Source: Stylophora pistillata | Lineage: Eukaryota | Direction: 5' to 3' | DNA length: 64,000 nucleotides | Assembly (NCBI RefSeq): GCF_002571385.2 | Contig: NW_019217819.1 | Location: forward strand, 44,273-108,272 | Shown: positions 1-58,898 of the stretch, piece after piece | Layout: every line of letters starts with the position of its first letter | Position numbering within the stretch: the first letter of the stretch is position 1 | Notes under the pieces: generated by a model | Databases searched by the model: none | The model's input: the letters and a program-made list of their open reading frames with translations, nothing else | Told to the model about the DNA's origin: nothing | Position numbers and translations under genes: made by a program

Positions 1-3000
1 GACACATCAAGATGATAGACTTTCGCTAGAGTGTATACGGACGGGTTTGGTCTCAGCTGCTGGTGATCACCAATTAAAATCAAATGTTGGGTGTTCTTCG
101 TCAAGGACGTTATGATATGAGCTTCGAGGACTTCTGCTGCTTCTTCAACGACGACTAGTGTCGGTTTAATCTCTTCCAGCAGGGCGCGGTACTTTGCTGC
201 ACCAGTTGTGGTCATTCCAATCACTACAGCATCTTTCAAGGCGTGCAGTTCTCCTTGGATTTTAATCTCTGTTAAGCGTTTGCAGATGTTCTCGTACTGC
301 TTATTCTTCTTTGAAATTTCCTCTTGACAGTTGGATTGAAACAATCTGAGCCAAAACAAATACAGCTTCCAGCGGTCCTCGAAGGGGAGGATCCAAACAT
401 CATCAATCTTGGAAAGTTGGGTCACAGTGAGGGGTTGAAGCTTGGATTCTCCTGCAAGAACTTTCAAATGATCTCTCGAGAGATTGGTGGGGCACTGTTT
501 CTCTTGTCCAGTGTTGTCCTGGATTTTTAGGAGTTGGAACTGATTCTCACCAAGCAAGCGCTGGTTTTGAATAATTTCAGCTTCTCTGTCTACTTCGATG
601 CTACCTTCTATTGCTTCCTTCGCTTCTTCATTGGAACTACTTTGCTTGGCAACGGATTCAGCGGTCTGAGTCTCATTCAATGAACTCCTCATCGCCACAG
701 TGTTTTGTTCCAGACCAAGCCAGCTTTCAAGGACTGATTTTCCTTGCAAGTTTAAAATGCTCTCTTTTGCTTTAAATTGGTTGAGGTGTTTCTGGGCGAC
801 AGAGCTTTGCAGGTCTGTCAGGCTGAGGATGTTTCGCTTACTGCGCGCCAGTCTGTTACGTGCTCTTTGTATGGCCTCTTGACATTTAAACATTTCTTGC
901 TTGACCCAGCGCTTGCTGTCGGAAGGCTTTGTGTGTTCTTGTAAGTTGTAGGCTTTAAGTAACTCTGAAGAACTTCGACCTCCAACTCTTATCACTCCCG
1001 TTTGTTGAAATTTTAGTACCCCTTCTAGAAACTGGTCCAGGGCGTGGTTTGTGTAACAAACCATCAACATGGTGGACTTCTTCTCCTCGTCCCAGGCATG
1101 CCTATTGTCTAAAAGTGCTCTCACAACCTTTAAACCGACGTATGTCTTACCTAGAGGAAACAGGGTAAAGAAACAATTAAAAGATGAAAAAACAGAACTT
1201 AAATATAGAAGAAAATTACTAGATGTGCTATTGATCAGCGCCTTGACAGGTGGGTGACCAGCTGGTGAGCTTTGGCTGAGGTCACTATGTCATGCTGCTC
1301 TGAGGCACACTTTCACAGTGCTAGTTCCCCGAAGACAGATGAAGGAGTTTGAAGTATTTTAAAGTAACTCATAAGGAAAGTTATAGAAAAATAGATCACC
1401 ATTGTAATCACCATTATTGTTTAAACGATTCTTGCGGCTTTAAAAACTCCAGCATGTTTTAGGGAAACACGCGTGAGGTTGGTCTAAAATTTCCCTTCTT
1501 TAATAGTTTATAGAAGGATATTTTAGTGATCAAGTTGCTTCGTTGGCCAATACAGCTCAATAAGCCTCAATACAGGCCCTTTTGAGGCTTTTAGAAGTTA
1601 AGACACTATCTACTTTTTTCTTTTTTTGGAGTGGTAGAGATGGAATTGACTTTACCTGTGCCTGGAGGACCTTGAATGACTGAGAACTCTTCCGTTAGGG
1701 CACCCTTCAACGCTTGAAATTGAGAATCGTTGAGTTTCACATCATCGACGTCAGGCCATGTCTTAGAATCGCAAACGGCCACTTTGTCTGCACCCTCGTG
1801 CACACTGAGAGTCTCCCTCAGGTCGTACCATACTTGTTTTTCGGATTTGAGGTATTGAGGAGGCTTGACATCGGGGTTACAATGGACCAAGTACTCTTGA
1901 AATGGAAACGTGTCAGAGGTAATCTGCTTTAGCTGTTGCAGAATGGGTCGATAGGCTTCAAAATAAGCTGGCGATTCCACCATTACATACTTATCATACA
2001 TCCTATGTGTACCCTCGAGACCGTCGAAAAACCGAATGTCCAGCCTTCCCGTCCGGAGTTCTTCTGGTTTGCGATTAGCTACTGTCGCAAATAGCATGGT
2101 TTCAAAATTATCCTTTGATAAGCAGAGGAATGAACCATACAGCAAACGCTTTGAATGCTCCCATGGTATCTTTCTGAGGTTCTTCATCTCCAGACGAATT
2201 CTATGAACAATTCCAGCCATTGTACAAACGGTGGTCATAATTTCGACATTTTCGTAAATGTACAAGTCTTGCGATCCAGTTTTCTTCGGAACCTTCTTCC
2301 TTATTTCGTTGATTCCCTCGCGCAGCGGGGCGACAAAATCCTCGCGAAGAAGGCGAAATTGTACATCTAAGTAATCATCTAGGTCTTTGTACTTCGCCAT
2401 TTTAACAGTTTTGTTTTGTCGCAGAAAGGGCCTCTCCTCTGAATTGATTTCAGTCTCACTCGGATAGATGGATATTTCTCTAAAGTCATTTGGCGGGGGT
2501 GGCTCCACGTCTTGTTTAACTTTCGGCCATTTCGTTGCTTGTTCCATTTTTCGCTCCTTTCCGATTTGCTCGCGTCTTTTAAGAATAAGCGTTTCCACCT
2601 CTTTCTTGTAGTCTTCAACCTCTTTCAAATCAAATTCGTTTAGAGCTCCACTGAGTTTATCGATCGGAACGTCGTAACAGGAGTTGGGGAGTTTGGCAAG
2701 CCATTCCTTGAAAAAAGTTATCAAGCATTCCACTAGTACAGAAAATTGACCTGAATCCATCTCCTCTTGTATAAACGGGAGACTTAAGATGTAATTTGGC
2801 AAATGAGTGTGCATAAGGGCAGATCCCTTGCAGATAGACAACACTTCGATCAGATTCTGGATCATCATAGTGTTGCACATTTTGCCCAGGATTTCCACAA
2901 GCAGGGTCATCCAATCTTCTTGGATAACATCAGCGTTTACCAACAATTCAAAGCTGTCGCGACACTGTAGGAGGGCTACTGCCATCTCCGATGGTTCCAT

Positions 3001-4466
3001 AGACCTTATCTCTTTCAGTTTTCGATAACCAAGATGTGGACCTCTTTGCCTACCCCTGTGTGGTCTTTGTTGATGTCGATCTCCACCGAAAGAACCTTAG
3101 AGGTGATAATTAACAAAGAAAATTTTAGAATAAACCAGCTATTCTTTGGGAAAACGTTCCTTTCTGTTCTGATTGCTAATGCTTTTATGCATCCAAAAAA
3201 AAAATAATATTAACTATTTCAATGCTATGTTTGTGAACTGTATATCTCTTGGATAACAAAAATTTAAGAGGCTCTGCTTTTTGATTGTGCAAAGAGAATT
3301 TACAGCTCCAATTCTTGATACATTAATCAAAGTTAGCAACACTTGATGAAATAAATCAAGGTAAATGAACGTTGTTTTTATTCATGCCTGTAGAGTATTT
3401 CTCACTATGAGGTGAATTGAGATCACAGCTTTTTATTTAGTTGTGCATCAAATTCAATAACGTAACTGTCACGCAAGATATAAATTTCGAGCATGAGTTC
3501 TTTAAAGTTGAGATGTATTTTAAAAAAATTGAAGTACCTGACTCGTCTTGGGGTTTTTAGCAACTTATGAAGGACTATTTGTAATTTCAGAAGTCCCATA
3601 GTGAATCGAAATCACTGAGGCTGAAATTTGCGTATGTAATTTTAGTCCTCGTTCGTTAGACCACTGACCAAAGTAGAAATTGCAAAATATTTTTCCAGCA
3701 ACGACACCTCAGCTTTTAACCTTCCTTTTTCAATTGTGAATAGATACATGCAGAACATAGCGCACTTTATCGGTGTGCAATCTGTGTATTTGTTTGATTG
3801 CAAGATTCACCAAACACAAGTATGTTTACATGTAAATTCACATTTGAAATATCACAATATCAGACACAGACACGACCCATCCACTTCCTGTTTTTAGTCT
3901 CCTAATCAAAACAGCCACGCCAAATATAATATTTCTGCTGGAACCAAGGTCTCCTTGATTCAGGGCTGACATCGATTGATGCATGAGTTCCTAAAACTTT
4001 CTTTTAAGTAATATTGTCACATTAAATCAAACCGATTGGAAAGTTCCGTGATGAGCTTAACACGATATACCTTTTTTCTTCTTCTAAATGCTTACATCAA
4101 TAAAGAATTGTCGCATTAACATTTGAATCGACGATGAATGTAGCACGTGCAATATTCATTCTTGTTGGTATAAGCAAAACACATCTTAATCAGGAATCAA
4201 GGGAATAGCTTAGGATCAGTGGAGTAAATTTCTTAACAATTGCCCTCTGAAAACCCAAAAGGGATTTGTTGTCACGTAATCAAAAGTTCAGATCTACTGA
4301 ACAAGATATAATTATGTAGACTGGGCTAGTATGAGACGGAATTCTCCTCTTTAAAGCGAGTTATGATCCTACCTTCTCCTGCGTTTGGAGCTGTACCTCT
4401 TCCTCTGCCTCCTCTACCTCCTCTACCACCACGGCTTCCTCTTCCACCAAAACGACCTCTATCCAT
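1..4466 (-). CDS. ZNFX1: ZNFX1-like helicase, copy A (3'-partial). Exons 4466-4373, 3095-1656, 1150-<1
   Basis: The spliced frame is continuous through GT-AG phase-1 introns. It reads MDRGRFGGRGSRGGRGG..., PPNDFR..YLDVQFRLLREDF, Q-motif LNDSQ, Walker A GPPGT/GKT (split by intron 1151-1655), CYTNHALDQFLE, Walker B VEEAAE and LIGDHQQLRP, and is still open at position 1. Confidence 0.92.
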
Positions 4467-4549
4467 GACACGAGATATTCAATCTGTGGTACAAATTATA
4501 TCTCCTGTTGAAAGGCAACAATTTTTGGAAAGATCAGCATAGATTTACG

Positions 4550-4670
4550 ATTTCGAAAGCGAAATAAGTCGACAACAAAGTATGTCAGCTATGTTGTTTG
4601 TCGTTTCGCGGAAAAAGAGGAAGTGTTCGCAGGAATGGTTACCAATGCAGAACTTGGTGTGATTGGTCAA
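4550..4670. promoter_or_regulatory. Copy A 5' regulatory cluster: ISRE/IRF-like, GAS/STAT-like, ETS and CCAAT motifs
   Basis: GAAAGCGAAA at 4555-4564, TTCGCGGAA at 4605-4613, AAAGAGGAAGTG at ~4614-4625, TTCGCAGGAA at 4626-4635 and CCAAT on both strands, all 90-200 bp from the ATG at 4466. Motif matches only. Confidence 0.5.
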
Positions 4671-4836
4671 TGTTAACAAAGCTGTCTGGGTAAGCCTCGG
4701 TCGGATTTATCGCACGGGAATATATTTTTCAGGGGATTGACGGAATGGAAGAGAAAACAAACTTCGCCAAACAGAAGAAGATTCAGGGCTACATGCAGGC
4801 TATACAACAAGTGTGTATGGGCATATTTCTTGATAA

Positions 4837-4871
4837 AGTGGTAATACAGTGGTAATACAGTGGTAATACAG
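4837..4871. repeat. 11-bp tandem repeat (AGTGGTAATAC)x3
   Basis: Read directly from the sequence, in the A/B divergent intergenic region. Confidence 0.9.
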
Positions 4872-5269
4872 CCACACAAATTATCCGTCTTTCCTTACAG
4901 ACATGAAACAGTTCACAACTTTGGCTGAACTGTTTTGTGAGACCAAAATATCAATAGTTAACCTAAGAGGTGCAAAAGTAAACGTTTTCGTGGACCAGTC
5001 CGTCACTTGGTCCACGGGTCCGGTCCATAGCAGGGATCCACGAACAGGGAGCAGTATTATCCGGTCGTTCAGTCTTTCTTAGCTACCTCATAGAAGCCAT
5101 AACTCAGCCCAAATATAAAATCACTTTGTTCAAAGCATTTATATCAGTTTGACTTCTTACTTCCACTTGAAATGACTAAATGATGAAATTTGTTAAATTC
5201 ATCCATTTTGATCACCTTTTGACCAGATAATATCTTTTTTGTTCTCGAAAGAATGAAACAAGCGCATTC

Positions 5270-5570
5270 CTACAACGATCCGTTGTCCATTCCAGTTCTT
5301 TCATATAGCTTTTCCCAGAAAGATATGAATCTCATTAAGATCAGACCATTTTCCGAGAATTTAAGCAGCCAAGTTATTATCCGAGAAAGCAAACATTTCC
5401 TCGGCTGTTCTCTACTGGAAACCTTTGATATTTCCCCGTTTACCAGAATCTGAACAAGTGGAAATTAAAGCTGTCGTTCCCGGAAGTTAAATTTCAGATT
5501 TTAGCTGCGTACCTAAGTGAGGTAAGGGAATATTATCAACTTTAATTCTTCAGGTTTCACCGTTTGGCTT
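5270..5570 (+). promoter_or_regulatory. Copy B promoter block with three GAS/STAT sites and a probable non-coding first exon donor
   Basis: TTCCCAGAA at 5312-5320, TTCCGAGAA at 5351-5359, TTCCCGGAA at 5477-5485 and AG|GTAAGG at ~5521. The block aligns with 19860-20090 and 46300-46580. Confidence 0.65.
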
Positions 5571-6698
5571 AGAACTTCCGAATTTGCATTACGGAGAACA
5601 GCTGTGTCTGTGTCATGGAAAGGAGAAAAGTTCCCGATCATAGGTATCCTTACAATTTTCATCAAATGAATAAACATGATTTTCGATCAATAGGACGTAT
5701 TCCAGGTTGAAATTTTGCGTTTGTCGTCAACTCGCCCGTTCATCTACAAGTTAAGTGAGTTTGCCTTTAAAACGGATCAGCTGCAGTGATTGTTAGTTCT
5801 TCTAAAACTACATGCTCCATTATTTTTCTATAAATAAGCTGTTGTCTTTGTATTGTTTTTAACATTCAAATTAGCTTAAGTTCTGTTACGTAAATGATGT
5901 GCCAATGTATATCTCACTAGTCAGAACATAAAGGTGCCCTTGTGAATTTCGATTACAAACTGAGTATTTTACTCTGTATTTCCGTCTGTGTTTAGACAGA
6001 TCTTTCGTCGAGGGTTTTACTATCACACGATTTTCCAACTTTGAAAACACAGAATGTTTGTCTATACGCCACGCCACCTAAGCCGTCTAAATTTTATAGT
6101 GCTACGGAATGTGTGCACTGAATCACCTAAAAGCGGTGCTGGCACCTTCAGGCCCAGAAGATTCTATCATTTGGGCTCCTGAGATACCAGGGGTCACGTT
6201 TCAGATAAATTGATATAACTGTCGAAGCTGCATCTCTAAAGAACAGAGATAAACAGGTCTATGCTGCCTTACTAAGCACAAATTAAAATTCATCAAAAAA
6301 CTGGAATTGAGAACGTTGTTTAATCGACGAGCATACCTACGCAATTTCACGTGGGTTTCAAACATATTAGGCTGCAAATGTCGAGGATAATTTCACTCAG
6401 ACCAAATTTATTCGAAGCATTAAACAAGGAAAATCCTCGAGTATTATTCAAGAACGAACAGATCCTCATTTTAATCCCACAAAAAAAGAATTTGTAAAAG
6501 TGCACTTAATTAAGTTGTCAAGATCCAACCTATTCCCATATGGTCGAGTATTTGTAACTGATTCACTTTCATGTGTTTATTCAGATGACTTGAACATTAT
6601 TGTTTCATTCTAATACTTCTAATCCACGCTATTATTGTAAAAGTTTTTACAATAACTGCACGACTTTTAAAAATCGCTAATCTTTTCCCTTAGGCACC

Positions 6699-9600
6699 AT
6701 GCCATGGAAGAAAGGAAGGCGTAAGAAAGATTCCAAAGGTAACTGAACGCATGACTCTCTTACTAAATCTTCATAGAGAACACGTTGAATGAGCGCTATG
6801 GCCTTCAGAAAAGCAGAAGCAAACCCTGCTTTCACTTCTGGAACCATTTCCATTCCGTTAGCAAATAAATTAGTGACAGGTGGCAAAGAGCTGAAATTTG
6901 AATCACAGCCAAATCAACCAACATTAGTACTGCAAAGGATGACAAAAAATGGGAAAAGGATTTAACAAATGGACATGAATACGTTTTGCAATGTTTAATA
7001 TTTCAGTGGCGCGCGTGTAATTCCACATACATACATTTACATACATTTTTATTTTGTAGAATACCTTGAGACAAGTTACCATTGCTACACAAGTGGCATA
7101 TAACTAACTCTTCTTCCTGGAAAACTACATTTGTGTATAAAACAGTATATTTCTTTCGTAACGTACAAAACGTAACCGAGAGTAAATAAGAGAAGAGTGC
7201 AAATTAAAGTGGTAGCTCTTCGACCTACTCCTTTTTACAGGGGCTTACATTTGTCATCCAATCATATATGAATTGTTACCTGCAAGCTAAATTAGGCAAA
7301 CAAGAAACTAAAAATGGAAATTAGATCTTTACTCGTAGCCATAACGAGGTTAAACGTTTCTATGAATATCAGTTTAACTTCTTTACATATTTAGAGTCAG
7401 ACGAAACAGAACAAAGACCACCCTTACCTAAAACACCAGGAGCTCACCCCTCCGAACAAAGAGCAGGTGCAAGTGGAGCAACTGCTGATGAAATACCAGG
7501 TACACGGATGGTTTCCGTGGTATACAATTGCAATCAACCCTCTTAGGGTTACATAAGAATGTCGCAGTTTCTCGAGACAAATTTACCTACATCCAATTTG
7601 TTTTTTTTGTTGTTGTTGCCATGAGTTTATGAGTGCGTTCCGTTGATTTATTGATTTGTTTTTTTGCTGTTATTATTACTTGCTTTGACTGATGGGTACG
7701 GCAGAGTTCTTTAATATCTGCCGATAGCTTTACCTACTCAGGTTGTCCTTTACCAGCAGTCCGCTGTAATACTTTAAGTTTCAATTGATTGTGATCGTCT
7801 GATTTTAGATGGCAACTCGAGGAACTTTGGACGAGGTCACAGAGGGTGGAACAGATCAAAACCTTGGGAAAGTAAAAATGAAGGATTCAGGGTACCGTCT
7901 CGTGGAAGAGGAGGAGTTAATCAAGGTCAGTTAGGGGAGAGAGAGTTATGTGTTCCTAACCATAACGTGATGCCTCGAGCAAGTGGCGTCATAATTCTTT
8001 TGGTACTCGCGAAATCGATGTTTCTAAGCACCAAACTCGTCATAGTGTTTTAATTTTCGTTCTATTAAAACACGTTACCCCCTGCATTGCAAATGATGGG
8101 ATAACTGATACCTTTAACTTGCCGACATAATGCTTTTAAATTCCGACTTCTTACCAAACAGAGACGTTCAAAGTACAACGGCCAGGAAGAGTAACCCCTG
8201 TGAGAAGAGATCGAAAGCCCAGGGCACAACACTATACTCGTGGTAAGTTTCAAGCTGGACAATTTCATTTCCTGGAGCTGAAACCATTAAAGGACATGGA
8301 TTCCACTGAGGTGGTTAGCGTCTTAAATGAGAGTATGGCCCGTCTCAAATATTTTCTGAGGTCTGATGAGGAAGAGCACAACAGTGATGAGTTCATCATG
8401 GATCTCACCTACACACTAGCAAATGCTTGCAGCGCACCACCAAGTGAGAAAACAAACAAGATTCTATCCTCCCTTAAAGGCTCAGTCTTCTTTAGCTCCA
8501 AGATTCCACGTTTGTTAGATCGCATACAGGGGTCAACAACCTTGCACGATCAAGAATCTCGAAAACAACTTATTCAGTGGTTGATTGTAGTGTTTGGGAA
8601 GTATTTGAGGCACTTGCCGAGTTCCTATGCCGATCTGCCTTACGATCAATTGAAACGAGCTTTGGAACAGTCCAACATTGATGGAAAGGATAAACTCCAA
8701 AATGATTTGCAGGCTTTTAACCACGCTAGAGACGACATCATAAGGGCTGAAAGACAGAAGCATGGAAAACGCTACATCAACAAGGCAGGGCAAAAGCCAC
8801 CTAACGATTTCAGAGACATACCGGTTTGTCCCACTAGCAAAGAAATCAGAACTCAAGAACGACCCTTCCTGCGAAAGAATATCACTAAAGGGAGGTATGA
8901 CGATGCCGAGCACTACCTGGATGTGCAATTTCGACTTCTCAGGGAAGACTTCCTTGAGCCACTTAGAGAAGGCATACCCGAAATTGTCCAAAATGTACCA
9001 AGAAGACAGCGGAAACAGTTGATGAGAAGTTACCCGGGAGCAAGAATCGTCGACAAGACTTTTACGCCGTCTGGAATAACGTACAAAGTACAATTTGATA
9101 CCTCGAAATTCGATACCAGAAAGTGGGCACACTCAAAACGTCTTATTTTTGGCTCATTCCTTTGTCTTTCTAAAGATAACTTTGAGAACATGCTTTTCGC
9201 CACGGTCTGTAACCGAGAACCATGGGAACTGGTGAAAGGAAAAATTGAAATTCGCTTTATTGAGGGGCAAGATGTGTTTGGAATAGAAAATTGGAAATGT
9301 GATTATCAAATGGTTGAGTCACCCGCTTACTTTGAAGCGTACCGTCATGTTCTTACAGGTCTAAAGGAATTGGATGAAGTTACCATGCCCTTCAAGAAAT
9401 ATCTGGTCGAATGCAGTGAAGAAGTCAATCCACCAGAGTATCTGAGGCGCGAGGATACTCAACACTCGGTGTGTTATGATCTTCGTTTGGCTTTGGATGT
9501 ACCGGAGTTGGCAAACGTTAGTGCGGTGCCTATTCTGATGCCTGAAGCGTGGCCCTCAGTTGAGATGCTTCCCCTTAACGATTCACAGCTTGAAGCCTTG

Positions 9601-43902: not shown

Positions 43903-44048
43903 NNNNNNNNNNNNNNNNNNNNNNNNNNNNNNNNNNNNNNNNNNNNNNNNNNNNNNNNNNNNNNNNNNNNNNNNNNNNNNNNNNNNNNNNNNNNNNNNNN
44001 NNNNNNNNNNNNNNNNNNNNNNNNNNNNNNNNNNNNNNNNNNNNNNNN
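43903..44048. other. Assembly gap (N run)
   Basis: Run of N. Confidence 1.
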
Positions 44049-45373: not shown

Positions 45374-46073
45374 NNNNNNNNNNNNNNNNNNNNNNNNNNN
45401 NNNNNNNNNNNNNNNNNNNNNNNNNNNNNNNNNNNNNNNNNNNNNNNNNNNNNNNNNNNNNNNNNNNNNNNNNNNNNNNNNNNNNNNNNNNNNNNNNNNN
45501 NNNNNNNNNNNNNNNNNNNNNNNNNNNNNNNNNNNNNNNNNNNNNNNNNNNNNNNNNNNNNNNNNNNNNNNNNNNNNNNNNNNNNNNNNNNNNNNNNNNN
45601 NNNNNNNNNNNNNNNNNNNNNNNNNNNNNNNNNNNNNNNNNNNNNNNNNNNNNNNNNNNNNNNNNNNNNNNNNNNNNNNNNNNNNNNNNNNNNNNNNNNN
45701 NNNNNNNNNNNNNNNNNNNNNNNNNNNNNNNNNNNNNNNNNNNNNNNNNNNNNNNNNNNNNNNNNNNNNNNNNNNNNNNNNNNNNNNNNNNNNNNNNNNN
45801 NNNNNNNNNNNNNNNNNNNNNNNNNNNNNNNNNNNNNNNNNNNNNNNNNNNNNNNNNNNNNNNNNNNNNNNNNNNNNNNNNNNNNNNNNNNNNNNNNNNN
45901 NNNNNNNNNNNNNNNNNNNNNNNNNNNNNNNNNNNNNNNNNNNNNNNNNNNNNNNNNNNNNNNNNNNNNNNNNNNNNNNNNNNNNNNNNNNNNNNNNNNN
46001 NNNNNNNNNNNNNNNNNNNNNNNNNNNNNNNNNNNNNNNNNNNNNNNNNNNNNNNNNNNNNNNNNNNNNNNNN
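45374..46073. other. Assembly gap (N run)
   Basis: Run of N. Confidence 1.
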
Positions 46074-46580: not shown

Positions 46581-48325
46581 TATGGGCTTGAGAATTTACA
46601 TGCAAGAAGACATTCATTTTCTCTGCGGCAGAGAAGGATCCACAAGCAGTGACTACGCTCAATTCTCACTGACCGGCAGTAACCATGGATCAACAAATTT
46701 CCCGGCTGAATGGGAAGTCATCCGTTAGGGAATTTCAGAATAGTTCTGTCTAAAATCTAGCTTCGTCTACTGCTTGTTAACCAAAAAGGCATCTGGTCTA
46801 ATACAAAGATGTCGCTTCGTCACAAATATTCTCCGCCTTGCTCTAACATAGACTGCAGCATTCAGCCTGAAAGCATTCCCCCACTGAACTCATCCAAGCA
46901 CGACTTTTTCGTTGCGCAACCAAAATGGCCATTTTAATCGCCTAATTCACAGAACATAGCTCATATTCTGAGCATTTTACACTTTTTCTCTATTGATATC
47001 GAGCTAGATCACCACATAGCCGCTTCTATTGCTCGTGTATGAGTATGTGTCGGTCCTTAGTTTTCAGCGGAAGCTAGCCGCACATGATGTTTCAATTTTT
47101 ATGTCGTCGATTGTTCTGGATCGTACCACTTTATTACAGACTCGGAATTTCAATAATGAACGAAGTGTCAGTCTTAGTGCCTGAACAGCAAACCCAATAT
47201 TTTCTTTCATCCGTACTCCAGAGCTACTCAAGCGACTTTCAAACGAGCGATCAAAAATGAATTGCACCTTGAAACAGAGACGGTAACATTTAAGCATGGC
47301 ATTATTCATAAATATGATGACGCGAAAGTAAATATAGTCTTGGAATTGAGCATACAATTTGCAGTTAAACCTACAACGTACAAACTGGGCTCGAACCCCC
47401 TCCTATTAGCACTGTTTGTTTAATCTTTTCAAACAATAAGTGCTGTTTCTCATCAATGTTTCTTTGAATGTTTGCAATTGTGAACATTTCATTGCGTTCA
47501 ACAGAGTAGATCTGGATTTAAAGATACTTTTCCAGGGGGATTTTGTTTCCAATTTTAGTCATAACGGTCTCTCGAATATGCCAGTGACATACGTTCCCAC
47601 ACAATATTTAGACGGAGTCTGAAATGTCAAACATTCTAATCTTGTTCATAGGTGGCTTGACACGCTTTGGGCGCGTTTAGTGCGTACGTATTATTTTTTA
47701 TTCTGGCCTCCCAAATTTTCGGCTATCTTTTGTAGCTATATTGTTTCCCTCTCGACTTCCACTTCTAAATAAGGTTGTGGTTAATTATAGACTGTGCATA
47801 TCACACAATTTTACTCCAACGTATTTCAGTTTCTTCCGACAAAAATAGCAAGAAAGAAAACAATGCGTATCAAGAAATGGTCTATTGTTCCGGCTCAATT
47901 TGATCACATCTGAACAGGTAGCCGAATTTTCCAAAAGTCCATCACTTCACATTTTCGTTTCTTGAACGATTCTAAGGTGGTTGCATATTTGTTCCGCTGT
48001 ATTACTCGGTAAGTGTTTGAATCCACCCACTCTAAACAAGGGGGGAAATTCAGACCCCAAAGCTGTGGCCAAAAAGCTCAGTGCCTCAGTGCTTTCCTCA
48101 GGAACCATACATTGCCNAAAATTTCATAAGATAATGTTCGTGTAAATCGCATACTTGCTCAGCCATTACAGAGGACGAATACAAATCTTTCACCAACGGA
48201 AGAGTGTTGGACTAGAGTTAAAATTCCAAAACGTGTACGGTAAAACCCTTTTGTTCAACCTGGCCATATTAGTCACGCACTTCTAAAAATAGCTGGTTGA
48301 CAATTAAATCTGTCCACACCTTTAG

Positions 48326-51300: not shown

Positions 51301-54300
51301 TAGATCTAAAAGCATTGAAAAAGATGGATTCAATTGAGGTGGTGAATGCGTTAAATCAGAATATGCCTGGTCTTAAGTTTTTTCTAAGATCAACAGATGA
51401 AGAGCACAGTAGTGATGAATTCATCATGGATCTCACTTGTACTCTGGCAAATGCTTGTAAAGCACCGCCAGGTGAGGATACTAACAGGATTTTAACTGCG
51501 CTGAGGGGTTCAGTATTCTTAACCTCAAAGATTCCACGGTTGTTAGATCGCCTGGCTTTGAATGATCAAGACGTCCATGGACGACTTTTTCACTGGCTTA
51601 TAACAGTGTTCATGAATTATCTGAGACACCTGCCTAGTTCCTATGCTTACCTACCTTACGATCAATTAAAAAGAACATTGGATCAGTCCAACAGCGTAGG
51701 TAAAGAGGAGCTACAGAGGAAATTACAGGCTTTTAAACAAGCCAGAGATGACATCGTAAGAGCCAACAGGCAAAAGCATGGAAAACACTACATCAACAAT
51801 GGGGGACAAAAGCCCCCAAACAATTTTAGAAACCTACCGGTTTGCCCTACTACTAAAGAAATCAGAACCCAAGAACGCCCTTTCCTGCGAAAGAACATAA
51901 CTAAGGGGAGGTATGAAGATGCCGAGCACTATCTCGATGTACAGTTTCGATTGCTTAGAGAAGATTTTCTTGAGCCTCTAAGAGAAGGAATTCACGAAAT
52001 TATCCAAAACGTGCCGAGAAAAATGCGCAATCAATTAATGAGATATTATCCGGGGGCACGAATCGTCGGAAAGACGTGCACGCCGTCTGGAATTTCTTAT
52101 AAAGTACAATTTGATATCTCCAGATTCAATACCCGGAGGTGGGCACACTCGAAACGGCTCATCTTTGGTTCCTTCCTTTGCCTTTCTAAAGACAACTTTG
52201 AGACCATGCTTTTCGCCACGGTTTGTAACAGAATTCCAGAGGAACTCATAACCGGAAAAATTGACATTCGATTCCTAGAAGAACAGGACACCTTTGGGAT
52301 CGAAAACCGGAACTTCGATTATCAAATGGTTGAATCGCCTGCTTATTATGAAGCATATTGTCATGTTCTTAAAGGGCTGAAGGAATTAGATGAAACAACC
52401 CTGCCTTTCAAGAAATACCTAGTTGAGTGCAGCGAGGAAGTTGATCCACCAGAGTACCTGAGACGCGAGGATACCCAAGAGCCTGTGTGTTACGATCTTA
52501 CTCAGGCCCTGAATGTCCCAGATGCAACGGAAGCAAAGAGAGTTCCGATCCTTCAACTTGACGCGTGGCCGCCTGTTGAGACACTTCCTCTTAACGAGTC
52601 TCAGCTCGAAGCCTTAAAAATGGCACTTTCAACTGAGTTTTCAGTAATTCAGGGTCCTCCAGGAACTGGAAAGACGTATGTCGGGGCAAAAATTGTGCGA
52701 TGCCTACTTGAGAACCGAGAGGCTTGGGACCCAAATGAAGTTTCGCCAATGCTTATGGTCTGTTACACTAACCACGCGTTGGATCAGTTTTTAGTGAAAG
52801 CATTGGAGTTCCTTCCTAAGGAAGAGATCATACGTGTCGGGGGGAGATGCAAAAGTAAGCAACTAGAGGAGTGTAACCTGAAGCTTTTCACCAGCCAATA
52901 CAGGAGGAACGACAGGCGAGGGGAGGTCAGAGCATTGATGGCAGACAACGTATCAGCGATGAAACATTGTAAAGAATTGCTTGCCGAAGCGGACGGTCGA
53001 TTGTTAGCTTTGGACGACTTGGAAGACTTGCTGTGTCCCGAACATGTTGAACAACTGTATAATGCCATCTTCCCTCACAACGCCGCAAGAGAATCCCGAC
53101 ATTCAGGGAACACTTTCACACTTTGGTTATGTAGCAACGAGCTGATTAACTCCTGTAATCGGAGAACAAAGAGCACAGAGGAAGGCTCGCAAAATGAACT
53201 TGTTTTTCCAAAGAATGAAGCAGGCGAAGACGAGGGAATATTTCATGATTCTACGTTGTTAATGGCACCATTTATTGCCGATGAAGTCGGATATGATGCT
53301 GAAATGGAGGGTGCAAGTGGTCAGAGGAAAGTTTCCTTTGCCGTAACGCCGACCTCCAATGACATCGAATCAAGCCGTCCTCCAGCGGAAGAGCAGCCAT
53401 CAAAACTACCAAAACATCATCCTAAACCGATGAAAAACCTTCTCTCTGATCAAAGAGATTTGCAGGCAACATCCCTCGCAAGTGCCACAAGAGAAGCACC
53501 GGAAAGTTTCGTAAGTCGAGACACCTCGCTAACAGCATCAATTGCTTTGGAAGCCAGTCCTCAAACACACTTTATAACTGAAAAGGATAACGACACTGAG
53601 ACTGTTGATGAAGTTTCAGCAATTTTTGAAGAGACCATTACAGTAGAAAAGGAAGCTGATTTGATACAGTATCAAAGATGTCTGCATGGAGACGGCGATT
53701 TCCTTCCTGTTACATCAAAGACGGAAACAGGAGACGAAAGAAGTCCAGAGCTAGAGGGAAAACACGAGGAAGAGGGATGGGAAATAGTGGTTTATAAGAA
53801 AAAAAAGAAGGGAAAAGTTCGTTTCCACATGAAACAAAAAATATCTGAGAGCTCTGAGGGTGCGTTACAGGAAGAGCAAGTATTCTATGTTCCAGACGAG
53901 GGTAATACTGACCCCAAGACTTCATCAAAGAAGAAGAAAAAGAAGCAAAAGAAGAAAATCAAAAAAATTCATCTCACAGCGAATATTGATGATTTAAGAA
54001 GGAAGTTAGAAAAAGAAACAACAATGACGTATGAAGAGGCAATGAGTGTCAAGGACATTTGGTTGTTATCGCCCTCCGAACGACTTCGATTATACCTTTT
54101 CTGGGTGGAGAGCTATCGTGAGCGGTATAGAGTTGAAATCCACAAATGTGAAAGGGAGTACGAACAACTTTGCCACGAGCTAGATGTTGTCAGATTTCAA
54201 GAAGAGGAAGAGGTAATACGTCGTGCAACTGTCATTGGCATGACTACCAGTGGTGCAGCAAGGTATCACTCAGTGCTTCAGAGAGTGGCCCCTAAAATAG

Positions 54301-57300
54301 TTATCATCGAAGAAGCAGCCGAGGTAATGGAAGCGCACATTATTACGTCTCTCTCACACAGCACAAAACACACTATTCTTATTGGAGATCACAAGCAACT
54401 CCGTCCAAAAGCAACAGTTTACGAATTGGCCCAAAAATATAATTTGGAAATCTCACTATTCGAAAGAATGGTAATGAACTGCATGGAATGCAAACGCTTA
54501 AGTATACAGCATCGCATGCGCCCAGAGATTGCCGCACTGACGAAAAGAATTTATGAACACGAGATCATTGACCACGAATCTGTATGCAGCTTTGAAAATA
54601 TCACAGGTGTATCCTGTAACCTCTTCTTCATCGATCATCGCCAACCTGAGAATTTAGAAGGTGGCTTACAGAGCTACTCCAACCCTCACGAAGCGGACTT
54701 TCTGGTAGCACTCTGCAACTACCTTTTGCTTCAAGGATACAAACAAAACCAAATTACAATTCTCACCATGTACACTGGCCAGTTGTTACTTCTTCAAGAG
54801 AAAATGCCAAGACGAATATTTGGGGGAATACGAGTATGTGCCGTTGACAATTTTCAAGGTGAAGAAAGCGACATAGTTCTACTGTCACTGGTGAGGAGCA
54901 ATTCAGAACACAAAATTGGTTTTCTGAGGGAGTCGAACAGAATCTGTGTTGCATTGTCAAGAGCACGCGAAGGATTTTACTGTATTGGAAATTTCCACCT
55001 ATTGAAAAGCCAGTGTAAGCTGTGGAGGGAGATATGTGATTATCTTCAAACGCAAAACTCAATCGGCGAGAATCTGCAGCTTGTTTGCAAGAGGCACAGT
55101 AATGTGTTTAATGTACAATCGGGAAGTGACTTTAACATACTTGGAGGATGCAAGAAGATTTGCGGAGACCGCCTTAATTGTGGGCATGCCTGTGAAAGCT
55201 TATGTCATGTTCACGACCCACGCCATCAGAACTTCAAGTGCTTGAAATCATGTTCCGAATCGTGTTCCAATGGACATCAGTGCCGACTTGTCTGTCATTC
55301 TCCTGTGGAATGTCCAAAATGTGTTGCACTTGTGACAAAGATAATCCCTGGATGTGGTCACGAACAACAAGTTCCTTGCGCTACTGACCCGTCAAAATGC
55401 TCTTGTCGAGCCCAATGCGAGAAACTCCTCCGATGTGGCCACAAATGCACGAATTCATGTGGAGCTATTCCATGTACTAAAAAATGTCTTGTTCAGTGCA
55501 AGAAAATCCTTCCATGCGGGCACGAAAGGTTGATGGCATGTTTTGAAAACCCCATGGAACATAGAAAATGCAACGCTAGCTGTCCAAAAGTTCTAGACTG
55601 TGGCCACCCATGTTCGATGAGATGCACCGATACCTGTCGATGTAACAGCAGCATTAAAGTTGAATTGGAGTGTGGACATCAAAAAATAATTTTATGTCGC
55701 GATAAAGAGCATCCTCAGCTATGCTCTGAGAGATGTGAAAGGGAACTGGACTGTGGACACATTTGTCAGGCTGAATGTCACGAGGATTGTGGAACGAAAC
55801 GATGCGAAAGTGCTGTCTCCAAGTGCCTTCCATGTGGCCACCAACAAATAGTTCCTTGCTACATGAACCCAAAAGAGGTTTCCTGTAACGCACCCTGTGA
55901 AAGGCAGCTGAAATGCGGTCACAAGTGCTCATCTGTTTGCGGCCGACAGTGCCAAGAGGTTCAATGCCAACATTTATGCGAAACGATCTGTAAGGGAGGT
56001 CATGCATGTCAAAAACCTTGCCACTTTAACAAGCCGTGTGGTGATTGCATGGAAATGGTTAATGTGACAATTCCATCATGTAAACACAGCATTGAAATCT
56101 ACTGTTACGTAGAACTAGCCACAGTGACGTGTAATAGACCTTGTGAAAGAGTACGAGCCTGTGGACATCCATGTCATGAAATTTGTGGTAAAGGATGCGA
56201 AACACGGCCGTGCAAGGAAATTGTAACCAGAACGTTACTATGTGGTCATGCAGTCCCCTTACCCTGTCGCAAGGACCCGGAAAGGTACAAATGCAAGGAA
56301 AAGATCGAGGTTTATTTATCCTGTGGACATAGTAAGGTCTTGGAGTGTTATGTTGCAAAGGCTGGAAAAGAAAAGATTTTGTGCAACGAAATCGTCCCAA
56401 AAGAACTACGCTGTAAACACGTGGTTTCTCTCCCCTGCCATAAAGGTCTCGAAGAGTACAACTGCAAGCAGAAAGTTAAAGTAGAGCTATCGTGCGGACA
56501 TGCCAAGACTGTTTTCTGCTTCGTTGCTACCGGTAGCTTGCAAAGTGTTAACTGTAAGGAGAAGGTGGAACGAAAACTACCGTGTGGACATAACGAGACC
56601 CTACCGTGTTATATAAATCCTGAAGATTATTGTTGTCAAAAGGAGGTTGAAATCACCCTTCCATGTTTACATAAGAAGCTGATAGCATGTGCCAAAGTGA
56701 GCCGTGGATTACGAGACGAACCATGTGATGAAATAATGACAAGGAAATTACCTTGCAATCATGAAAAGCAAATGAAGTGCTCATCGCAGACGGAGAAAGC
56801 GTTTTGTGATGCTCCTTGCGAACGACTTCTTCCATGTAACCACCCTTGCCCGGGAAAATGTGGCGATAAATGTGTAACTTTCAAATGCGCAGTCAAAGTT
56901 GAAAAGGTACTAGCATGCGGAAAACATTGGAAAAGTTGCCGTTGCTCGGAAGATGTGTCACAGAGTACTTGTTCGAACAGCTGCACCCTTACGTTGTCCT
57001 GCGGGCACAGATGCCCTGGTAAATGTTTTGAAGATTGCAATAATTACAAGTGTTCAGTGATGATGTGGAAGCAACTCGGTTGCGTAGGAAACCATTGGAA
57101 GAAAATGGCTTGTAGTGAGGACTCTAGGACTGCAAAATGCGAGAAACAATGCAACAGAACTCTTGTTTGTGGTCATCCGTGTCCGGGGCTATGCAGTCAA
57201 GACTGTGGCGGTATGAAGTGTATCCGAAGAGTAGAAAAACGTTTCCCTTGTGGTCATGAGGAACCACTTCAGTGTTACCAGAGTGAAGGTGCAACTTGTA

Positions 57301-58898
57301 TCAAACCCTGTCTGCGTCGAAAGAGTAGGTGCAAACATATGTGCAAAGGAGTGTGTGGTGACGACTGCTCCAAGTATCCTTGCGATGTAGTTGTGAATAA
57401 GACCCTTGCATGTGGCCATAAAATAAGGATGCTTTGTAGCCGGACTGCTGATGCCATTGAATGCCCCGTTCCGTGTGGGAAAAAACTACTCTGTGGTCAC
57501 CAATGTTCTGGGGCATGTAAAGATTGTCAACCGAGAGGCTCACATGAATTATGTCAATATACATGTGGCAAATTGCTCGTATGCCTCCACCGTTGTAAGG
57601 CTTTGTGTAGCGAGCCTTGTCCTCCATGTGACAGGAATTGCAGCCGAGGGTGCCCTCATGGAAAGTGGTCCGAAAAATGTTCTAAACCGTACGAGCCGTG
57701 TAAAAAACCATGCACCTGGAGTTGTCCTCACTATCAATGTAACAATCTCTGTGGTGAAGAATGCGATCGCCCTCGCTGTAATGCACCCTGTACCAAGAAG
57801 CTCCCATGTCGTCATCCGTGTATTGGGCTGTGTGGAGAAAATTGTCCCACTCTATGCGGCATTTGCCCCTCCAAAAAGCTTTCTTCCCTATTTGGTGATA
57901 GACGTGGTGAGAAAATGGAAGTTCCCAGATGCTTACAGTTATTTGACTGTGGTCATATTGTAAAGGTTGATGAAATGGATGCGTGGGTGTTGCTTGAGTT
58001 AGGTAATGACGTACACCTCTTGCGATGTCCGAAGTGCACTACATCAATAACATTTAGCTATCGCTATGCCAACATCATCAAAAGGGTACTGACCAACATT
58101 GAAGATGTTAAAAGACAACTGCAACAGGTTGAAAATGAAGTAACTAACTCAGCCATACAGCTTGGAAAAGATCTAATTATTGAGCGGCCAAAACATGACA
58201 GAAAGAAGAAGAAGAGGGTCCAGCAAACAAAATTAGACTGCGTTCAGGCAGTTCCATGGACTTGGAATCCTTTCAATCTGCCTGATGCAAATCAGAACAG
58301 TGTCCTTAAGTCGACGTTTAGAAATCATCTGATCATCTTTCAGCAGGTAAAGAGAGCAGAACAACTGCTAAAAGGTTTTAAAGTTGGATGCGAAGTCCAA
58401 CATAAGGTGGGGAATTTATCTAAAGCTACATTGGAAGATGCATTAGAAGATATCAAAGAGTACCTTGAAGACCCTCAACTGGATCTGAAATCACTCAGTC
58501 AAGTGTACGAACAAGCGAGGAAGTTCTTCCTATTTTCTAGTGTTTTAGAAGTCTATAACACTATTGTAAGGAAGAAAATCGCCCTGTCAAGTATTGGTGA
58601 AACTCGATTAAAGTTGGCATGCGATGGGTTTTCAGGGTTCATCCAGGGTGACGATGGTGCTTTAGATCTTGAACGGCTGGAAAAGATCGTTAACGCGTTA
58701 CGTGCAGAGGTAAAACTCGCTCCTTTACCGCCTGAGGAAGCAAAAGTCTTCTCGAACTTCCCTGGATACCAAAGTGACATTTGGAAGTTATGTGGACAAG
58801 GTCATGTTTACTACATGACATGGATTGTGCGAGGGGGCGAAGACATACCGATTGGAAGTAAAGGATGCACAAGATGTACAAGAAGTGAGACTGGATAA
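48326..58898 (+). CDS. ZNFX1: ZNFX1-like protein, copy D (start exon unresolved). Exons 48326-48427, 49570-49689, 49981-50097, 50377-50481, 51181-58898
   Basis: The 2612-aa ORF has intact helicase motifs and ~33 fingers. Four open phase 1-1 mini-exons are homologous to those of B and C. No clean ATG exon was found. Confidence 0.9.
49718..49766. repeat. 15-bp tandem repeat (AGTTAAGACCTAGAA)x3, intronic
   Basis: Read directly from the sequence. Confidence 0.9.

What the first reader, a model, noticed from the sequence alone, without database searches (positions are those of the whole stretch)
1..58898. Diversified four-gene ZNFX1 array: a candidate expanded innate RNA-sensing locus
Seen: four divergent paralogues in 59 kb, all with intact ATPase/helicase motifs. 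They differ in N-terminal exons, helicase insert, zinc-finger number and C-terminus. Known: ZNFX1 is a single-copy antiviral RNA helicase/E3 ligase in vertebrates and acts in heritable RNA silencing in nematodes. Inference: this is a birth-and-death immune receptor array in which the enzymatic core is conserved and the specificity or output modules vary.
Basis: partly seen in the sequence, partly recalled or inferred. Interest (0 to 1): 0.8.

Follow-up and report, generated by a model that had tools for sequence, protein, structure and literature searches.

The report
Conserved coral ZNFX1-like helicase gene cluster
The window holds part of a real, expressed tandem cluster of ZNFX1-like RNA helicase genes in the coral Stylophora pistillata; the family's expansion in corals is already published, but these copies carry a tripled zinc-finger stalk and lack the ubiquitin-ligase catalytic residues of human ZNFX1.

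Summary
Three giant-exon ZNFX1-like genes lie on the + strand: B 8200-15783, C 28709-36319 and D 51060-58898. The 5' half of a fourth, divergent copy (A, 3-3096) lies on the - strand. The N gaps fall between C and D and touch no coding exon. The genome is Stylophora pistillata; D is RefSeq XP_022780981.1.

The array is larger than reported: six loci on this scaffold and at least 21 ZNFX1-domain loci genome-wide. Cunning et al. 2018 already reported this family as expanded in stony corals (25 genes in S. pistillata).

B, C, D and F each have a Pocillopora orthologue, and the orders B-C and D-F are conserved. dN/dS is about 0.25 overall and 0.09-0.23 across the helicase segments. C is spliced in polyA RNA. 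So this is an old, constrained cluster, not a fast birth-and-death array.

The helicase motifs and the auto-inhibitory plug helix are conserved. The zinc-finger stalk has 28-33 units against 9-10 in canonical relatives. The RZ finger lacks the catalytic Cys/His pair, and the Miz linchpin is replaced.

An immune role is inferred and was not tested.

The parts
3..3096 (-). Copy A, 5' half only. Exon 3096-1609 holds the ARM region, the ZNFX1 domain and the first part of Walker A. Exon about 1150-3 holds the rest of Walker A, a short 1C insert with the plug motif EAEIIQNQR, motif II VVVEEAAEV and motif III GDHQQLRP. It runs off the start of the window.
   Evidence: the continuation in L001 lies behind 1698 unread letters
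4272..5589 (.). Region between A and B (head to head). It has blocks conserved with the region upstream of D: 4272-4360, 4461-4689 and 5276-5589 match 44627-44714, 44796-45030 and 46298-46601. It holds one conserved GAS-like site, TTCCGAGAA, at 5351 and 46373, and a conserved donor-like AGGTAAGGGAA.
7349..7918 (+). Putative small 5' coding exons of B (about 7349-7495 and 7790-7918), placed by similarity to the N-termini of annotated coral homologues only.
8200..15783 (+). Gene B, giant exon (2527-aa open frame). Features: ZNFX1 domain 9010-9321; Walker A 9637-9660; variable 1C insert 10117-11067 with plug-helix motif EADLIQDQR at 10696-10722; motif II 11332-11361; motif VI 11983-12003; zinc-finger stalk 12070-14820 (28 CxH units); Miz-like C-x-H...CxxC 14821-14916; RZ-like tail 15661-15756.
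16288..18469 (.). Two Pao/BEL retrotransposon peptidase fragments in opposite orientation (16288-16722 on -, 18095-18469 on +) between B and C.
25669..28262 (+). Four small 5' exons of C seen in RNA contigs: 25669-25791, 26623-26739, 27725-27856, 28174-28262. All are joined by GT..AG introns. At least one more exon lies upstream of 25669 (loose ends there).
28709..36319 (+). Gene C, giant exon (open frame from 28709; the RNA joint enters at about 28722). Features: Walker A 30206-30229; 1C insert 30689-31276 with plug motif EATRIQNQR at 30941-30967; motif II 31541-31570; motif VI 32192-32212; zinc-finger stalk 32423-35389 (33 units); Miz-like 35390-35482; RZ-like tail 36203-36298.
43903..46073 (.). 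Two assembly gaps (43903-44048, 45374-46073) in the region upstream of D. They lie outside all mapped coding exons and were not filled.
48325..50480 (+). Small 5' coding exons of D, mapped with RefSeq protein XP_022780981.1: about 48325-48465, 49563-49688, 49980-50102, 50373-50480.
51060..58898 (+). Gene D, giant exon (open frame from 51060; the match to XP_022780981.1 starts at about 51177). Features: Walker A 52653-52676; 1C insert 53133-54032 with plug motif EADLIQYQR at 53652-53678; motif II 54297-54326; motif VI 54948-54968; zinc-finger stalk 55179-57947 (30 units); Miz-like 57948-58040; RZ-like tail 58782-58877.

Best explanation
The window covers part of a conserved tandem cluster of ZNFX1-family genes in the stony coral Stylophora pistillata.

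Shown:
- B, C and D are intact genes. C is shown spliced in RNA, B is held in polyA RNA runs, and D rests on its RefSeq model. Each has a few small 5' exons and one exon of about 7.6 kb.
- They belong to a 'long-stalk' subfamily (2,500-2,700 aa) found in many stony corals. A is a member of a shorter, more canonical subfamily.
- Each of B, C, D and the next gene F has its own orthologue in Pocillopora, in the same order. All evolve under purifying selection.

Inferred from homology to human ZNFX1:
- Each protein is a UPF1-like SF1 RNA helicase.
- It is held inactive by an acidic plug helix in the 1C insertion. Single-stranded RNA displaces the plug and switches on ATP hydrolysis.
- The rigid zinc-finger stalk, here about three times longer than usual, spaces the motor from the C-terminal module and may drive self-assembly.

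Inferred from residue loss:
- The C-terminal module keeps its zinc ligands. It has lost the RZ nucleophile Cys, the base His and the Miz linchpin.
- These copies therefore probably do not ubiquitinate the way human ZNFX1 does. They may act through RNA binding and clustering, or together with RZ-competent paralogues.

Inferred only: a role in cytoplasmic RNA surveillance or antiviral defence is the most likely biology. It has not been demonstrated in corals.
For: Identity and species:
- D is 99.96% identical over 2573 aa to XP_022780981.1 / PFX31406.1 of S. pistillata, and the scaffold length matches.

Family:
- PF25396, AAA_11 and AAA_12; 9q9z at E 9e-241.
- ATP- and RNA-contact residues are conserved (residue roles).
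- The plug helix of human residues 828-836 aligns with EADLIQDQR in B, and the motif is kept in A, C and D.

Extent:
- At least 21 PF25396 loci in the genome; six on this scaffold; a second giant-type cluster on C776.

Age and constraint:
- The tree places B/G and D as sister clades, with an Oculina clade outside them, and places C/H and F in other old clades.
- Pocillopora contigs keep the orders B-C and D-F.
- dN/dS is 0.248 (B), 0.247 (D), 0.239 (C, first 592 aa) and 0.261 (F, first 830 aa). Helicase segments give 0.09-0.23, the 1C insert 0.47-0.52 and the stalk 0.27-0.30.

Expression:
-.

Stalk:
- 28-33 CxH units with a 27-aa period, against 9 in the Tubulanus and Ruditapes ZNFX1-like proteins and a median of 10 in RZ-bearing representatives.
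- Canonical-size relatives align only to the distal fingers plus the Miz region.

E3 module:
- The Miz zinc ligands and the RZ-like Cys ligands are invariant in 36 sequences; the RZ-like His is not.
- The canonical RZ pattern is found in 0 of 119 coral long-stalk proteins and in 37 of 108 representatives.
- PF20173 gives no hit in B-D. It gives 21 hits elsewhere in the genome and none in the window.
- The linchpin position is S, T or V instead of K or Q.
- The Atlas feature search puts the module next to RZ-type clusters.
Against: - No functional or expression-response data for these genes were examined. The immune role rests on human, fish and mollusc work and on a passing mention of Znfx1 among immune modulators in a Stylophora single-cell atlas.
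- From my memory of the abstract of Blasi et al. 2022 (not held), no ZNFX1 induction was seen in virus-infected corals.
- Loss of E3 activity is inferred from motif spacing, not assayed. Paralogue C has a Cys one residue off the canonical nucleophile position. A Leu at the E2-contact position could still bind an E2.
- The model of the C-terminal module has low confidence in the Miz region (pLDDT about 50-60) and found no fold match.
- dN/dS is a pairwise Nei-Gojobori estimate and cannot detect site-specific positive selection.
- The 5' exons of B are placed by homology only.
Confidence: 0.6

Rival explanations
1. One reading: a rapidly turning-over birth-and-death array of innate immune RNA receptors. 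The enzymatic core stays fixed while specificity and output modules diversify under pathogen pressure.
For: - Tandem paralogues with variable 1C insert, stalk length and tail.
- A truncated young duplicate, E.
- Mosaic dS between C and H, which suggests gene conversion.
- The family is significantly larger in stony corals than in other anthozoans.
- The highest dN/dS values are in the insert and the proximal stalk, with one 60-codon window in B at 1.56.
Against: - One-to-one orthologues and conserved gene order in Pocillopora.
- The paralogue subfamilies are older than the split from the Oculina lineage.
- Every domain has dN/dS below 0.55.
- The E3 'core' is not conserved.
- No induction data were examined.
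Confidence: 0.2
2. The genes act mainly in small-RNA or transposon silencing and germ-granule biology, like C. elegans ZNFX-1 and S. pombe Hrr1, rather than in antiviral sensing. The expansion would then track the transposon load of coral genomes.
For: - The 1C insertion's closest sequence relative is reported to be Hrr1, and ZNFX1 acts in RNAi in C. elegans.
- The RZ/E3 catalytic residues used for antiviral RNA entrapment in humans are lost.
- The inserts carry poly-Lys stretches that could be nuclear localisation signals.
- Retrotransposon fragments lie in the cluster.
Against: - No expression-site or small-RNA data were examined.
- The Stylophora single-cell preprint lists Znfx1 with immune modulators in alga-hosting cells, not germline.
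- Mollusc and crustacean ZNFX1-like genes respond to virus or dsRNA.
Confidence: 0.18
3. The copies are artefacts (haplotigs, a mis-assembled repeat) or decaying pseudogenes.
For: - The draft assembly has gaps.
- E and F are 100% identical over about 550 aa, which could be an assembly duplication.
- No RefSeq protein for B or C appeared among the hits.
Against: - The copies are only 44-60% identical to each other.
- The open frames are intact over 7.6 kb.
- dN/dS is about 0.25.
- Spliced RNA exists.
- Independent Pocillopora contigs carry the same genes in the same order.
Confidence: 0.02

Closest known systems
Human ZNFX1 (PDB 9q9z; Squair et al. 2025, bioRxiv 10.1101/2025.09.05.674436; bioRxiv 10.1101/2025.10.14.682297, 2025; He et al. 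2026, PMC13710534)
   Same: ARM plus ZNFX1 domain. UPF1-like helicase with Walker A, the deviant EEAA Walker B and motif VI Arg. RNA-contact Phe and Arg. A large 1C insertion with a conserved acidic plug helix (EADLIQ..R). NFX1-type zinc-finger stalk. Miz/Z-RING zinc ligands C-x-H...C-x2-C. A helical region and a terminal C-x3-H...CxxC zinc knuckle.
   Different: The stalk has 28-33 units, against the 12 zinc fingers He et al. number in human ZNFX1 and the 9-10 CxH units of invertebrate canonical relatives. Total length is 2,500-2,700 aa against 1,918. The RZ nucleophile (C1860) and base (H1881) are absent at canonical spacing, and the protein ends 6-8 residues after the CxxC. The linchpin Q1623 is replaced by S or T. 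At the position of the E2-contact F1575, fixed-offset numbering gives Gly in B and Arg in D; with an inferred small insertion the equivalent residue is Leu in B and C and Phe in D. There are many copies instead of one, and most of the coding sequence is one giant exon.
Scleractinian ZNFX1 orthogroup expansion (Cunning et al. 2018, PMC6208414, Table S1, ORTHOMCL36)
   Same: The same gene family in the same species. They report 16, 25, 31 and 24 genes in four stony corals (25 in S. pistillata if the table follows the paper's species order) against 11, 8, 7 and 6 in other cnidarians, and interpret this as immune-gene diversification. My count of at least 21 loci agrees.
   Different: That paper gives counts only. 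It does not describe the tandem clusters, the three architectural classes, the long stalk, the loss of RZ residues, orthology with Pocillopora or selection.
Metazoan multi-copy ZNFX1 survey (Blasi et al. 2022, Fish Shellfish Immunol 121:456; not held here, content from my memory of the abstract)
   Same: Invertebrate ZNFX1 genes occur in several copies, with few exons and one very large one. The helicase is conserved and there are variable disordered regions.
   Different: As I recall it, induction was seen in virus-infected molluscs but not in corals. I could not check whether the long-stalk, RZ-less architecture is described there.
Canonical invertebrate ZNFX1-like proteins (Tubulanus polymorphus XP_074653872.1, Ruditapes philippinarum XP_060589825.1) and the A-type paralogues of Stylophora on scaffolds C283 and C920
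   Same: The same overall domain order. The distal fingers plus the Miz region align at 36-42% identity.
   Different: These keep Phe at -16 of the Miz Cys, a Lys linchpin and the full RZ pattern C-x3-H-x6-C-x8-C-x2-C-x8-H. Their stalk has 9-11 units.
C. elegans ZNFX-1 / S. pombe Hrr1
   Same: The same helicase family, with a role in RNA-guided silencing. The 1C insertion is reported as related to Hrr1.
   Different: No sequence of either was compared here. The relation is taken from the literature and from my own knowledge.

Membership tests
[quoted passage not shown] | N-terminal ARM region followed by the ZNFX1 domain (Pfam PF25396) | tested here: met
   PF25396 at 102-114 bits, against a cut-off of 27, in A, B, C and D. 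9q9z matches at E 9e-241.
[quoted passage not shown] | UPF1-like SF1 helicase core with Walker A, deviant Walker B EEAA, motif III, motif VI Arg and the RNA-contact Phe and Arg | tested here: met
   B-D. The residues aligned to human K625/T626, H1073/R1074, F1210, R1216 and R1223 are identical in B. For A, only motifs I-III are visible in the window.
[quoted passage not shown] | Large 1C regulatory insertion containing a conserved acidic plug helix (human residues 828-836) | tested here: met
   Human EADLIQADR aligns with B's EADLIQDQR (residue range). D has EADLIQYQR, C has EATRIQNQR and A has EAEIIQNQR. Docking into the RNA groove was not tested.
[quoted passage not shown] | NFX1-type zinc-finger stalk after the helicase | tested here: met
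   CxH units with a 27-aa period, 28-33 per protein. The distal units align with canonical ZNFX1-like proteins. Pfam's zf-NF-X1 model gave no hit, so this rests on pattern and homology.
[quoted passage not shown] | Miz/Z-RING E2-binding domain: zinc ligands C1591, H1593, C1619, C1622; E2-contact F1575; linchpin Q1623 | tested here: inconclusive
   The zinc ligands are invariant in 36 sequences, with spacing C-x-H-x24-C-x2-C. The linchpin is T (B, D) or S (C) instead of Q or K. The residue exactly 16 before the Miz Cys is Gly in B and Arg in D; allowing a small insertion, the equivalent residue is Leu in B and C and Phe in D. E2 binding was not assayed.
[quoted passage not shown] | RZ finger with metal ligands plus nucleophile Cys (C1860) and general base His (H1881): C-x3-H-x6-C-x8-C-x2-C-x8-H | tested here: not met
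   B-D have C-x3-H-x20-C-x2-C and then stop after 6-8 residues. There is no Cys at H+7 (C has one at H+6) and no His at +9. There are 0 of 119 canonical patterns in coral long-stalk proteins. PF20173 gives no hit.
Birth-and-death immune receptor array | Tandem duplicates with pseudogenised or fragmentary members | tested here: met
   Six loci on scaffold C36, including the truncated E fragment just downstream of the window.
Birth-and-death immune receptor array | Rapid lineage-specific gain and loss (no stable one-to-one orthologues between related genera) | tested here: not met
   B, C, D and F each have a roughly 85%-identical Pocillopora orthologue, in conserved order. The subfamilies are shared with other stony corals.
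Birth-and-death immune receptor array | Positive selection on recognition surfaces | tested here: inconclusive
   Pairwise dN/dS is below 0.55 in every domain. One window of 82 in B exceeds 1. Site models were not run.
Birth-and-death immune receptor array | Expression induced by pathogens or nucleic-acid mimics | not tested
   Only presence and splicing in RNA runs were examined. There is one conserved GAS-like site upstream of B and D.

The most novel reading that the evidence does not exclude
The long-stalk, RZ-less ZNFX1-like genes could be a functionally distinct class. They would be RNA-activated helicases that have given up their own ubiquitin-transfer chemistry and work as sensors or scaffolds for RZ-competent paralogues, as in sensor/helper pairs. 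Paralogue-specific 1C insertions and stalk length would set which RNAs are caught and how the assemblies are built.

Among the representatives examined, long stalks go with absence of the canonical RZ pattern: a median of 16 units without RZ against 10 with it. This hints that the same trade has happened repeatedly in invertebrates.
Probability: 0.15. Interest if true: 0.7.

Novelty: new member of a known kind. Interest (0 to 1): 0.35.

Why it matters
ZNFX1 has only recently been shown to be an RNA-activated helicase and E3 ligase that traps viral RNA in humans. Corals are threatened by disease and lack interferon, and they carry 20-30 relatives of this single human gene.

The window shows how part of that repertoire is organised. 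It is an old, syntenic, constrained cluster of long-stalk genes that keep the motor and its auto-inhibitory plug but have shed the ligase catalytic residues.

This gives natural separation-of-function variants for testing which ZNFX1 activities need ubiquitination. It also gives paralogue-resolved targets for coral immune and symbiosis transcriptomics.

As a discovery it is modest. The expansion is published and the genes are annotated.

Tried and rejected
- Pfam on the C-terminal halves, on the last 80 aa and on 200-aa pieces of the stalk gave only chance-level hits. It found neither zf-NF-X1 nor ZnF_RZ-type.
- phmmer of the last 427 aa of B against PDB sequences found nothing meaningful. There was only a weak PML RING similarity at E about 1, and no RNF213 hit.
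- AlphaFold2 of the 398-aa C-terminal module with 36 sequences gave mean pLDDT 71. The helical bundle is confident and the Miz region is poor. Foldseek against the PDB found no match at E <= 0.001. I did not run the VIA searches, because the confident part is a generic helical bundle.
- Haplotig or artefact reading: rejected (see rivals).
- Pseudogene reading: rejected by open frames, dN/dS and RNA.
- Rfam at gathering threshold and ARAGORN found nothing in the window.
- Intergenic ORFs of at least 93 aa: only two Pao retrotransposon peptidase fragments had a family.
- One broad literature search was wasted on unspecific terms. Blasi et al. 2022 is not held.
- I could not obtain the human C-terminal sequence through the tools. 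The E3-module comparison therefore uses residue numbers from the papers and the natural Tubulanus and Ruditapes sequences.
- Spliced models were never joined. All searches used single exons by reference, and frame continuity for C was checked by arithmetic on the RNA joints and tblastn frames only.

Full report
**1. What is in the window**

The window is 64,000 bases at 40% G+C. It has N runs at 43903-44048 and 45374-46073 and single Ns at 17410 and 48117.

Three open frames of 2527, 2536 and 2612 aa lie on the + strand: B at 8200-15783, C at 28709-36319 and D at 51060-58898. A 464-aa frame lies on the - strand at 1606-3000.

All four carry the Pfam ZNFX1 domain. B-D also carry AAA_11 and AAA_12. 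tblastn shows no other ZNFX1-like piece in the window. It also shows that copy A continues on the - strand to base 3, where the window cuts it.

The gaps were checked first.
- They lie between the stop codon of C and the first mapped coding exon of D, so no ZNFX1 frame crosses them.
- The two 'ORFs' at 45329-46089 are translations of N.
- Conserved non-coding blocks stand on both sides of the 700-N gap, in the same order as upstream of B. That fits continuity but does not prove it.
- I filled no gap.
- 1698 unread letters lie directly upstream of the window, in the middle of gene A. I left them alone too.

**2. Organism and annotation**

[quoted passage not shown] That protein is encoded on a 1,176,468-bp scaffold, which is the length of the window's scaffold.
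- The RefSeq model adds about 140 N-terminal residues from small exons at about 48325-50480.
- No RefSeq protein for B or C was among the hits.

**3. The array is bigger than four genes**

A six-frame search of the whole genome with PF25396 gives at least 21 loci. I fetched them and mapped them with B. They fall into three classes.
- **Giant-exon, long-stalk genes.** B, C, D and F, plus a truncated fragment E, lie on this scaffold. G, H and I lie on scaffold C776. I is XP_022807780.1.
- **A-type genes.** These have exons of 500-900 aa and about 10 finger units. They are A here, four on C283 and two on C920.
- **Multi-exon genes.** These lie on C1156, C60 and C52.

Pairwise identity among the giant genes is 44-68%. 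The exceptions are C/H at 83% and E/F at 96%, with E/F identical over about 550 aa.

**4. Age, synteny and selection**

A FastTree phylogeny of 123 full-length long-stalk proteins gives these placements, all with local support of 100:
- B groups with P0001, then G, then P0002.
- D groups with P0017 and P0005, as the sister clade to the B group.
- A clade containing an Oculina patagonica protein lies outside both.
- C/H, F and I sit in other deep clades, each with members from other corals.

P0017's 90% cluster holds Pocillopora verrucosa XP_058944209.1 and a P. damicornis protein. The Tara Pacific contigs that encode P0001 and P0017 each carry a second ZNFX1-like gene 7.5-8.2 kb downstream. 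These downstream genes are the orthologues of C and F, each at 85% identity. The orders B-C and D-F therefore predate the Stylophora-Pocillopora split. Fragment E has no counterpart in the Pocillopora contig.

Nei-Gojobori estimates against these orthologues:

| Gene | dN/dS | dS |
|---|---|---|
| B | 0.248 | 0.31 |
| D | 0.247 | 0.31 |
| C (first 592 aa) | 0.239 | 0.31 |
| F (first 830 aa) | 0.261 | 0.28 |

By domain, for B and D:

| Domain | dN/dS |
|---|---|
| ZNFX1 domain | 0.04-0.11 |
| Helicase lobes | 0.09-0.23 |
| 1C insert | 0.47-0.52 |
| Finger stalk | 0.27-0.30 |
| C-terminal module | 0.16-0.27 |

Only one 60-codon window in B exceeds 1.

Between C and H, dS is 0.03-0.08 over the first 340 codons but 0.4-0.5 in the helicase. 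That pattern suggests 5' gene conversion.

**5. Transcription**

- Two polyA RNA-seq runs, each of about 0.2 Gb, hold 81% of the sampled 31-mers of 7300-15800 (gene B). Twelve further runs guessed to be RNA hold 76-81%. Runs of that size are below 1x of a 398-Mb genome, so DNA carry-over cannot explain contigs covering the gene.
- I laid four runs from four studies on 25600-31599. One polyA contig of 5,747 nt joins exons 25669-25791, 26623-26739, 27725-27856 and 28174-28262 to the giant exon from about 28722. All four introns are GT..AG. Two further runs show all four joints and the fourth run shows three.
- C is therefore a spliced, polyadenylated mRNA.
- For D, the evidence is the RefSeq model only.

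**6. Protein anatomy compared with human ZNFX1**

Helicase core:
- Motifs I, II (EEAA), III and VI are intact.
- In the alignment to 9q9z, the chain index is the human residue number plus 87. The residues equivalent to H1073/R1074, F1210, R1216 and R1223 are identical in B (residue roles).

The 'helicase insert':
- It is 317, 196 and 300 aa long in B, C and D. It is rich in Ser, Glu and Lys and carries poly-Lys runs.
- It contains a motif that aligns with the human plug helix at residues 828-836. Human has EADLIQADR, B has EADLIQDQR, D has EADLIQYQR, C has EATRIQNQR and A has EAEIIQNQR.
- This is the helix that blocks the RNA groove until RNA displaces it.

Zinc-finger stalk:
- The stalk is a 27-aa-period array of CxH units, with 28 (B), 33 (C) and 30 (D) units over 946-1066 aa. 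The paralogues differ by indels the size of one or more repeat units.
- Canonical relatives with an RZ finger have a median of 10 units over 370 aa. The A-type genes have about 10-11.
- An exhaustive HMMER search with the stalk plus the C-terminal module found 2361 clusters (50% identity) at E <= 0.001. Most proteins of 1,700-2,300 aa align only to query positions of about 700-965, which are the distal fingers plus the Miz region.
- The proximal 700 aa of stalk is therefore the added part.

**7. The E3 module is remodelled**

What the papers define for human ZNFX1:
- The Miz/Z-RING domain has E2-contact F1575, zinc ligands C1591, H1593, C1619 and C1622, and linchpin Q1623.
- The RZ finger has metal ligands C1849, H1853, C1869 and C1872, nucleophile C1860 and base H1881.

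What canonical invertebrate proteins show:
- The Tubulanus and Ruditapes proteins retrieved here have exactly that RZ spacing. They also have Phe at -16 of the Miz Cys and a Lys linchpin.

What B, C and D show:
- The Miz zinc ligands are kept, and are invariant in 36 sequences.
- The linchpin is T, S and T.
- At the Phe position, fixed-offset numbering gives Gly in B and Arg in D. Allowing a three-residue insertion, the equivalent residue is Leu in B and C and Phe in D.
- The tail reads C-x3-H-x20-C-x2-C and ends 6-8 residues later. There is no His at +9. There is no Cys at H+7, although C has one at H+6.

Wider counts:
- None of 119 coral long-stalk proteins has the canonical RZ pattern, against 37 of 108 representatives.
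- Pfam ZnF_RZ-type finds 21 places in the genome. These include sites next to six A-type genes and two multi-exon genes. None lies in the window or elsewhere on this scaffold.
- The protein-language-model search still places the module next to RZ-type clusters, at 0.95. The module is therefore homologous but degenerate.
- The structure model and Foldseek added nothing.

**8. Literature**

- Cunning et al. 2018 list the orthogroup whose best hit is mouse ZNFX1 as significantly larger in stony corals. They report 16, 25, 31 and 24 genes against 11, 8, 7 and 6 (p = 3e-5), and name 'NFX1-type zinc finger protein' among coral-diversified, stress- and immune-responsive genes.
- Blasi et al. 2022 surveyed metazoan ZNFX1. 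The paper is not held. From memory, it reports that invertebrates have several copies with one very large exon.
- Three ZNFX1 genes are reported in Aplysia.
- ZNFX1-like genes rise after OsHV-1 infection in oyster and after dsRNA in lobster.
- A Stylophora single-cell preprint lists Znfx1 among immune modulators of transitional alga-hosting cells.

**9. Verdict**

This is a diversified tandem family with a conserved motor. But it is an old, syntenic, constrained cluster. Its ligase part is not conserved, and its expansion is already in the literature.
- The mechanism I commit to is an auto-inhibited helicase, released by RNA and carried on an extra-long rigid stalk. Ubiquitin-transfer chemistry is lost or altered. 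The most likely role is RNA surveillance or antiviral defence. I put about 0.6 on the whole statement; the functional part is the weak link.
- What is new relative to the literature I could search is the architecture and the cluster history, not the existence of the expansion.
I reached them independently before reading those notes and tested both.

Noticed in passing
L003:2776-4998 (scaffold C36:111048-113270, about 3 kb downstream of the window's end): Fragment E is a 741-aa open frame 96% identical to the 5' part of gene F, which starts about 2 kb further on. The two are 100% identical over about 550 aa, then E diverges and stops. It has no counterpart in the Pocillopora contig. It is either a very young partial tandem duplication or an assembly duplication.
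   Followed up: partly
window 28709-29730 versus L007 (scaffold C776): Paralogues C and H are on different scaffolds. They have dS 0.03-0.08 over the first 340 codons but 0.4-0.5 in the helicase, a mosaic that suggests 5' gene conversion between clusters.
   Followed up: partly
window 5276-5589 and 46298-46601: A conserved upstream block is shared by B and D at 66% identity. It has one GAS-like palindrome, TTCCGAGAA, at homologous positions (5351 and 46373) and a conserved donor-like AGGTAAGGGAA, so it is probably promoter plus a first non-coding exon. TTCNNNGAA occurs 45 times in the window against about 20 expected from base composition, so the site alone is weak evidence for STAT control.
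   Followed up: partly
window 16288-16722 (-) and 18095-18469 (+): Two Pao/BEL retrotransposon peptidase (PF05380) fragments in opposite orientation lie between B and C.
   Followed up: no
window 62600-62783: A long hairpin or palindrome matches several generic miRNA-precursor models far below their gathering scores (best 84.6 bits against 500). No hammerhead family matched at E <= 1 and nothing reached gathering level.
   Followed up: partly
L001:8303-10000 (scaffold C36:42575-44272, directly upstream of the window): 1698 unread letters interrupt gene A between motif III and the RecA2 part. A's last exon (L001:5547-6731, - strand) keeps Phe at -16 and a Gln linchpin in the Miz domain. Its RZ region is shortened to C-x3-H-x7-C-x2-C and does not match PF20173.
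   Followed up: partly
scaffolds C283 (four genes) and C920 (two genes): A-type ZNFX1 paralogues also sit in tandem clusters. Each has a strong canonical RZ-type finger exon (84-90 bits) a few kb downstream of its main exons. The genome therefore keeps RZ-competent and RZ-degenerate subfamilies side by side.
   Followed up: partly
representatives (for example the cluster of P0147, which holds Crassostrea virginica XP_022331472.2): Among ZNFX1-like representatives of at least 1500 aa, those without a canonical RZ pattern have longer stalks (median 16 units, up to 31) than those with it (median 10). Stalk expansion with RZ loss may therefore recur outside corals. Truncated gene models could inflate this.
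   Followed up: no
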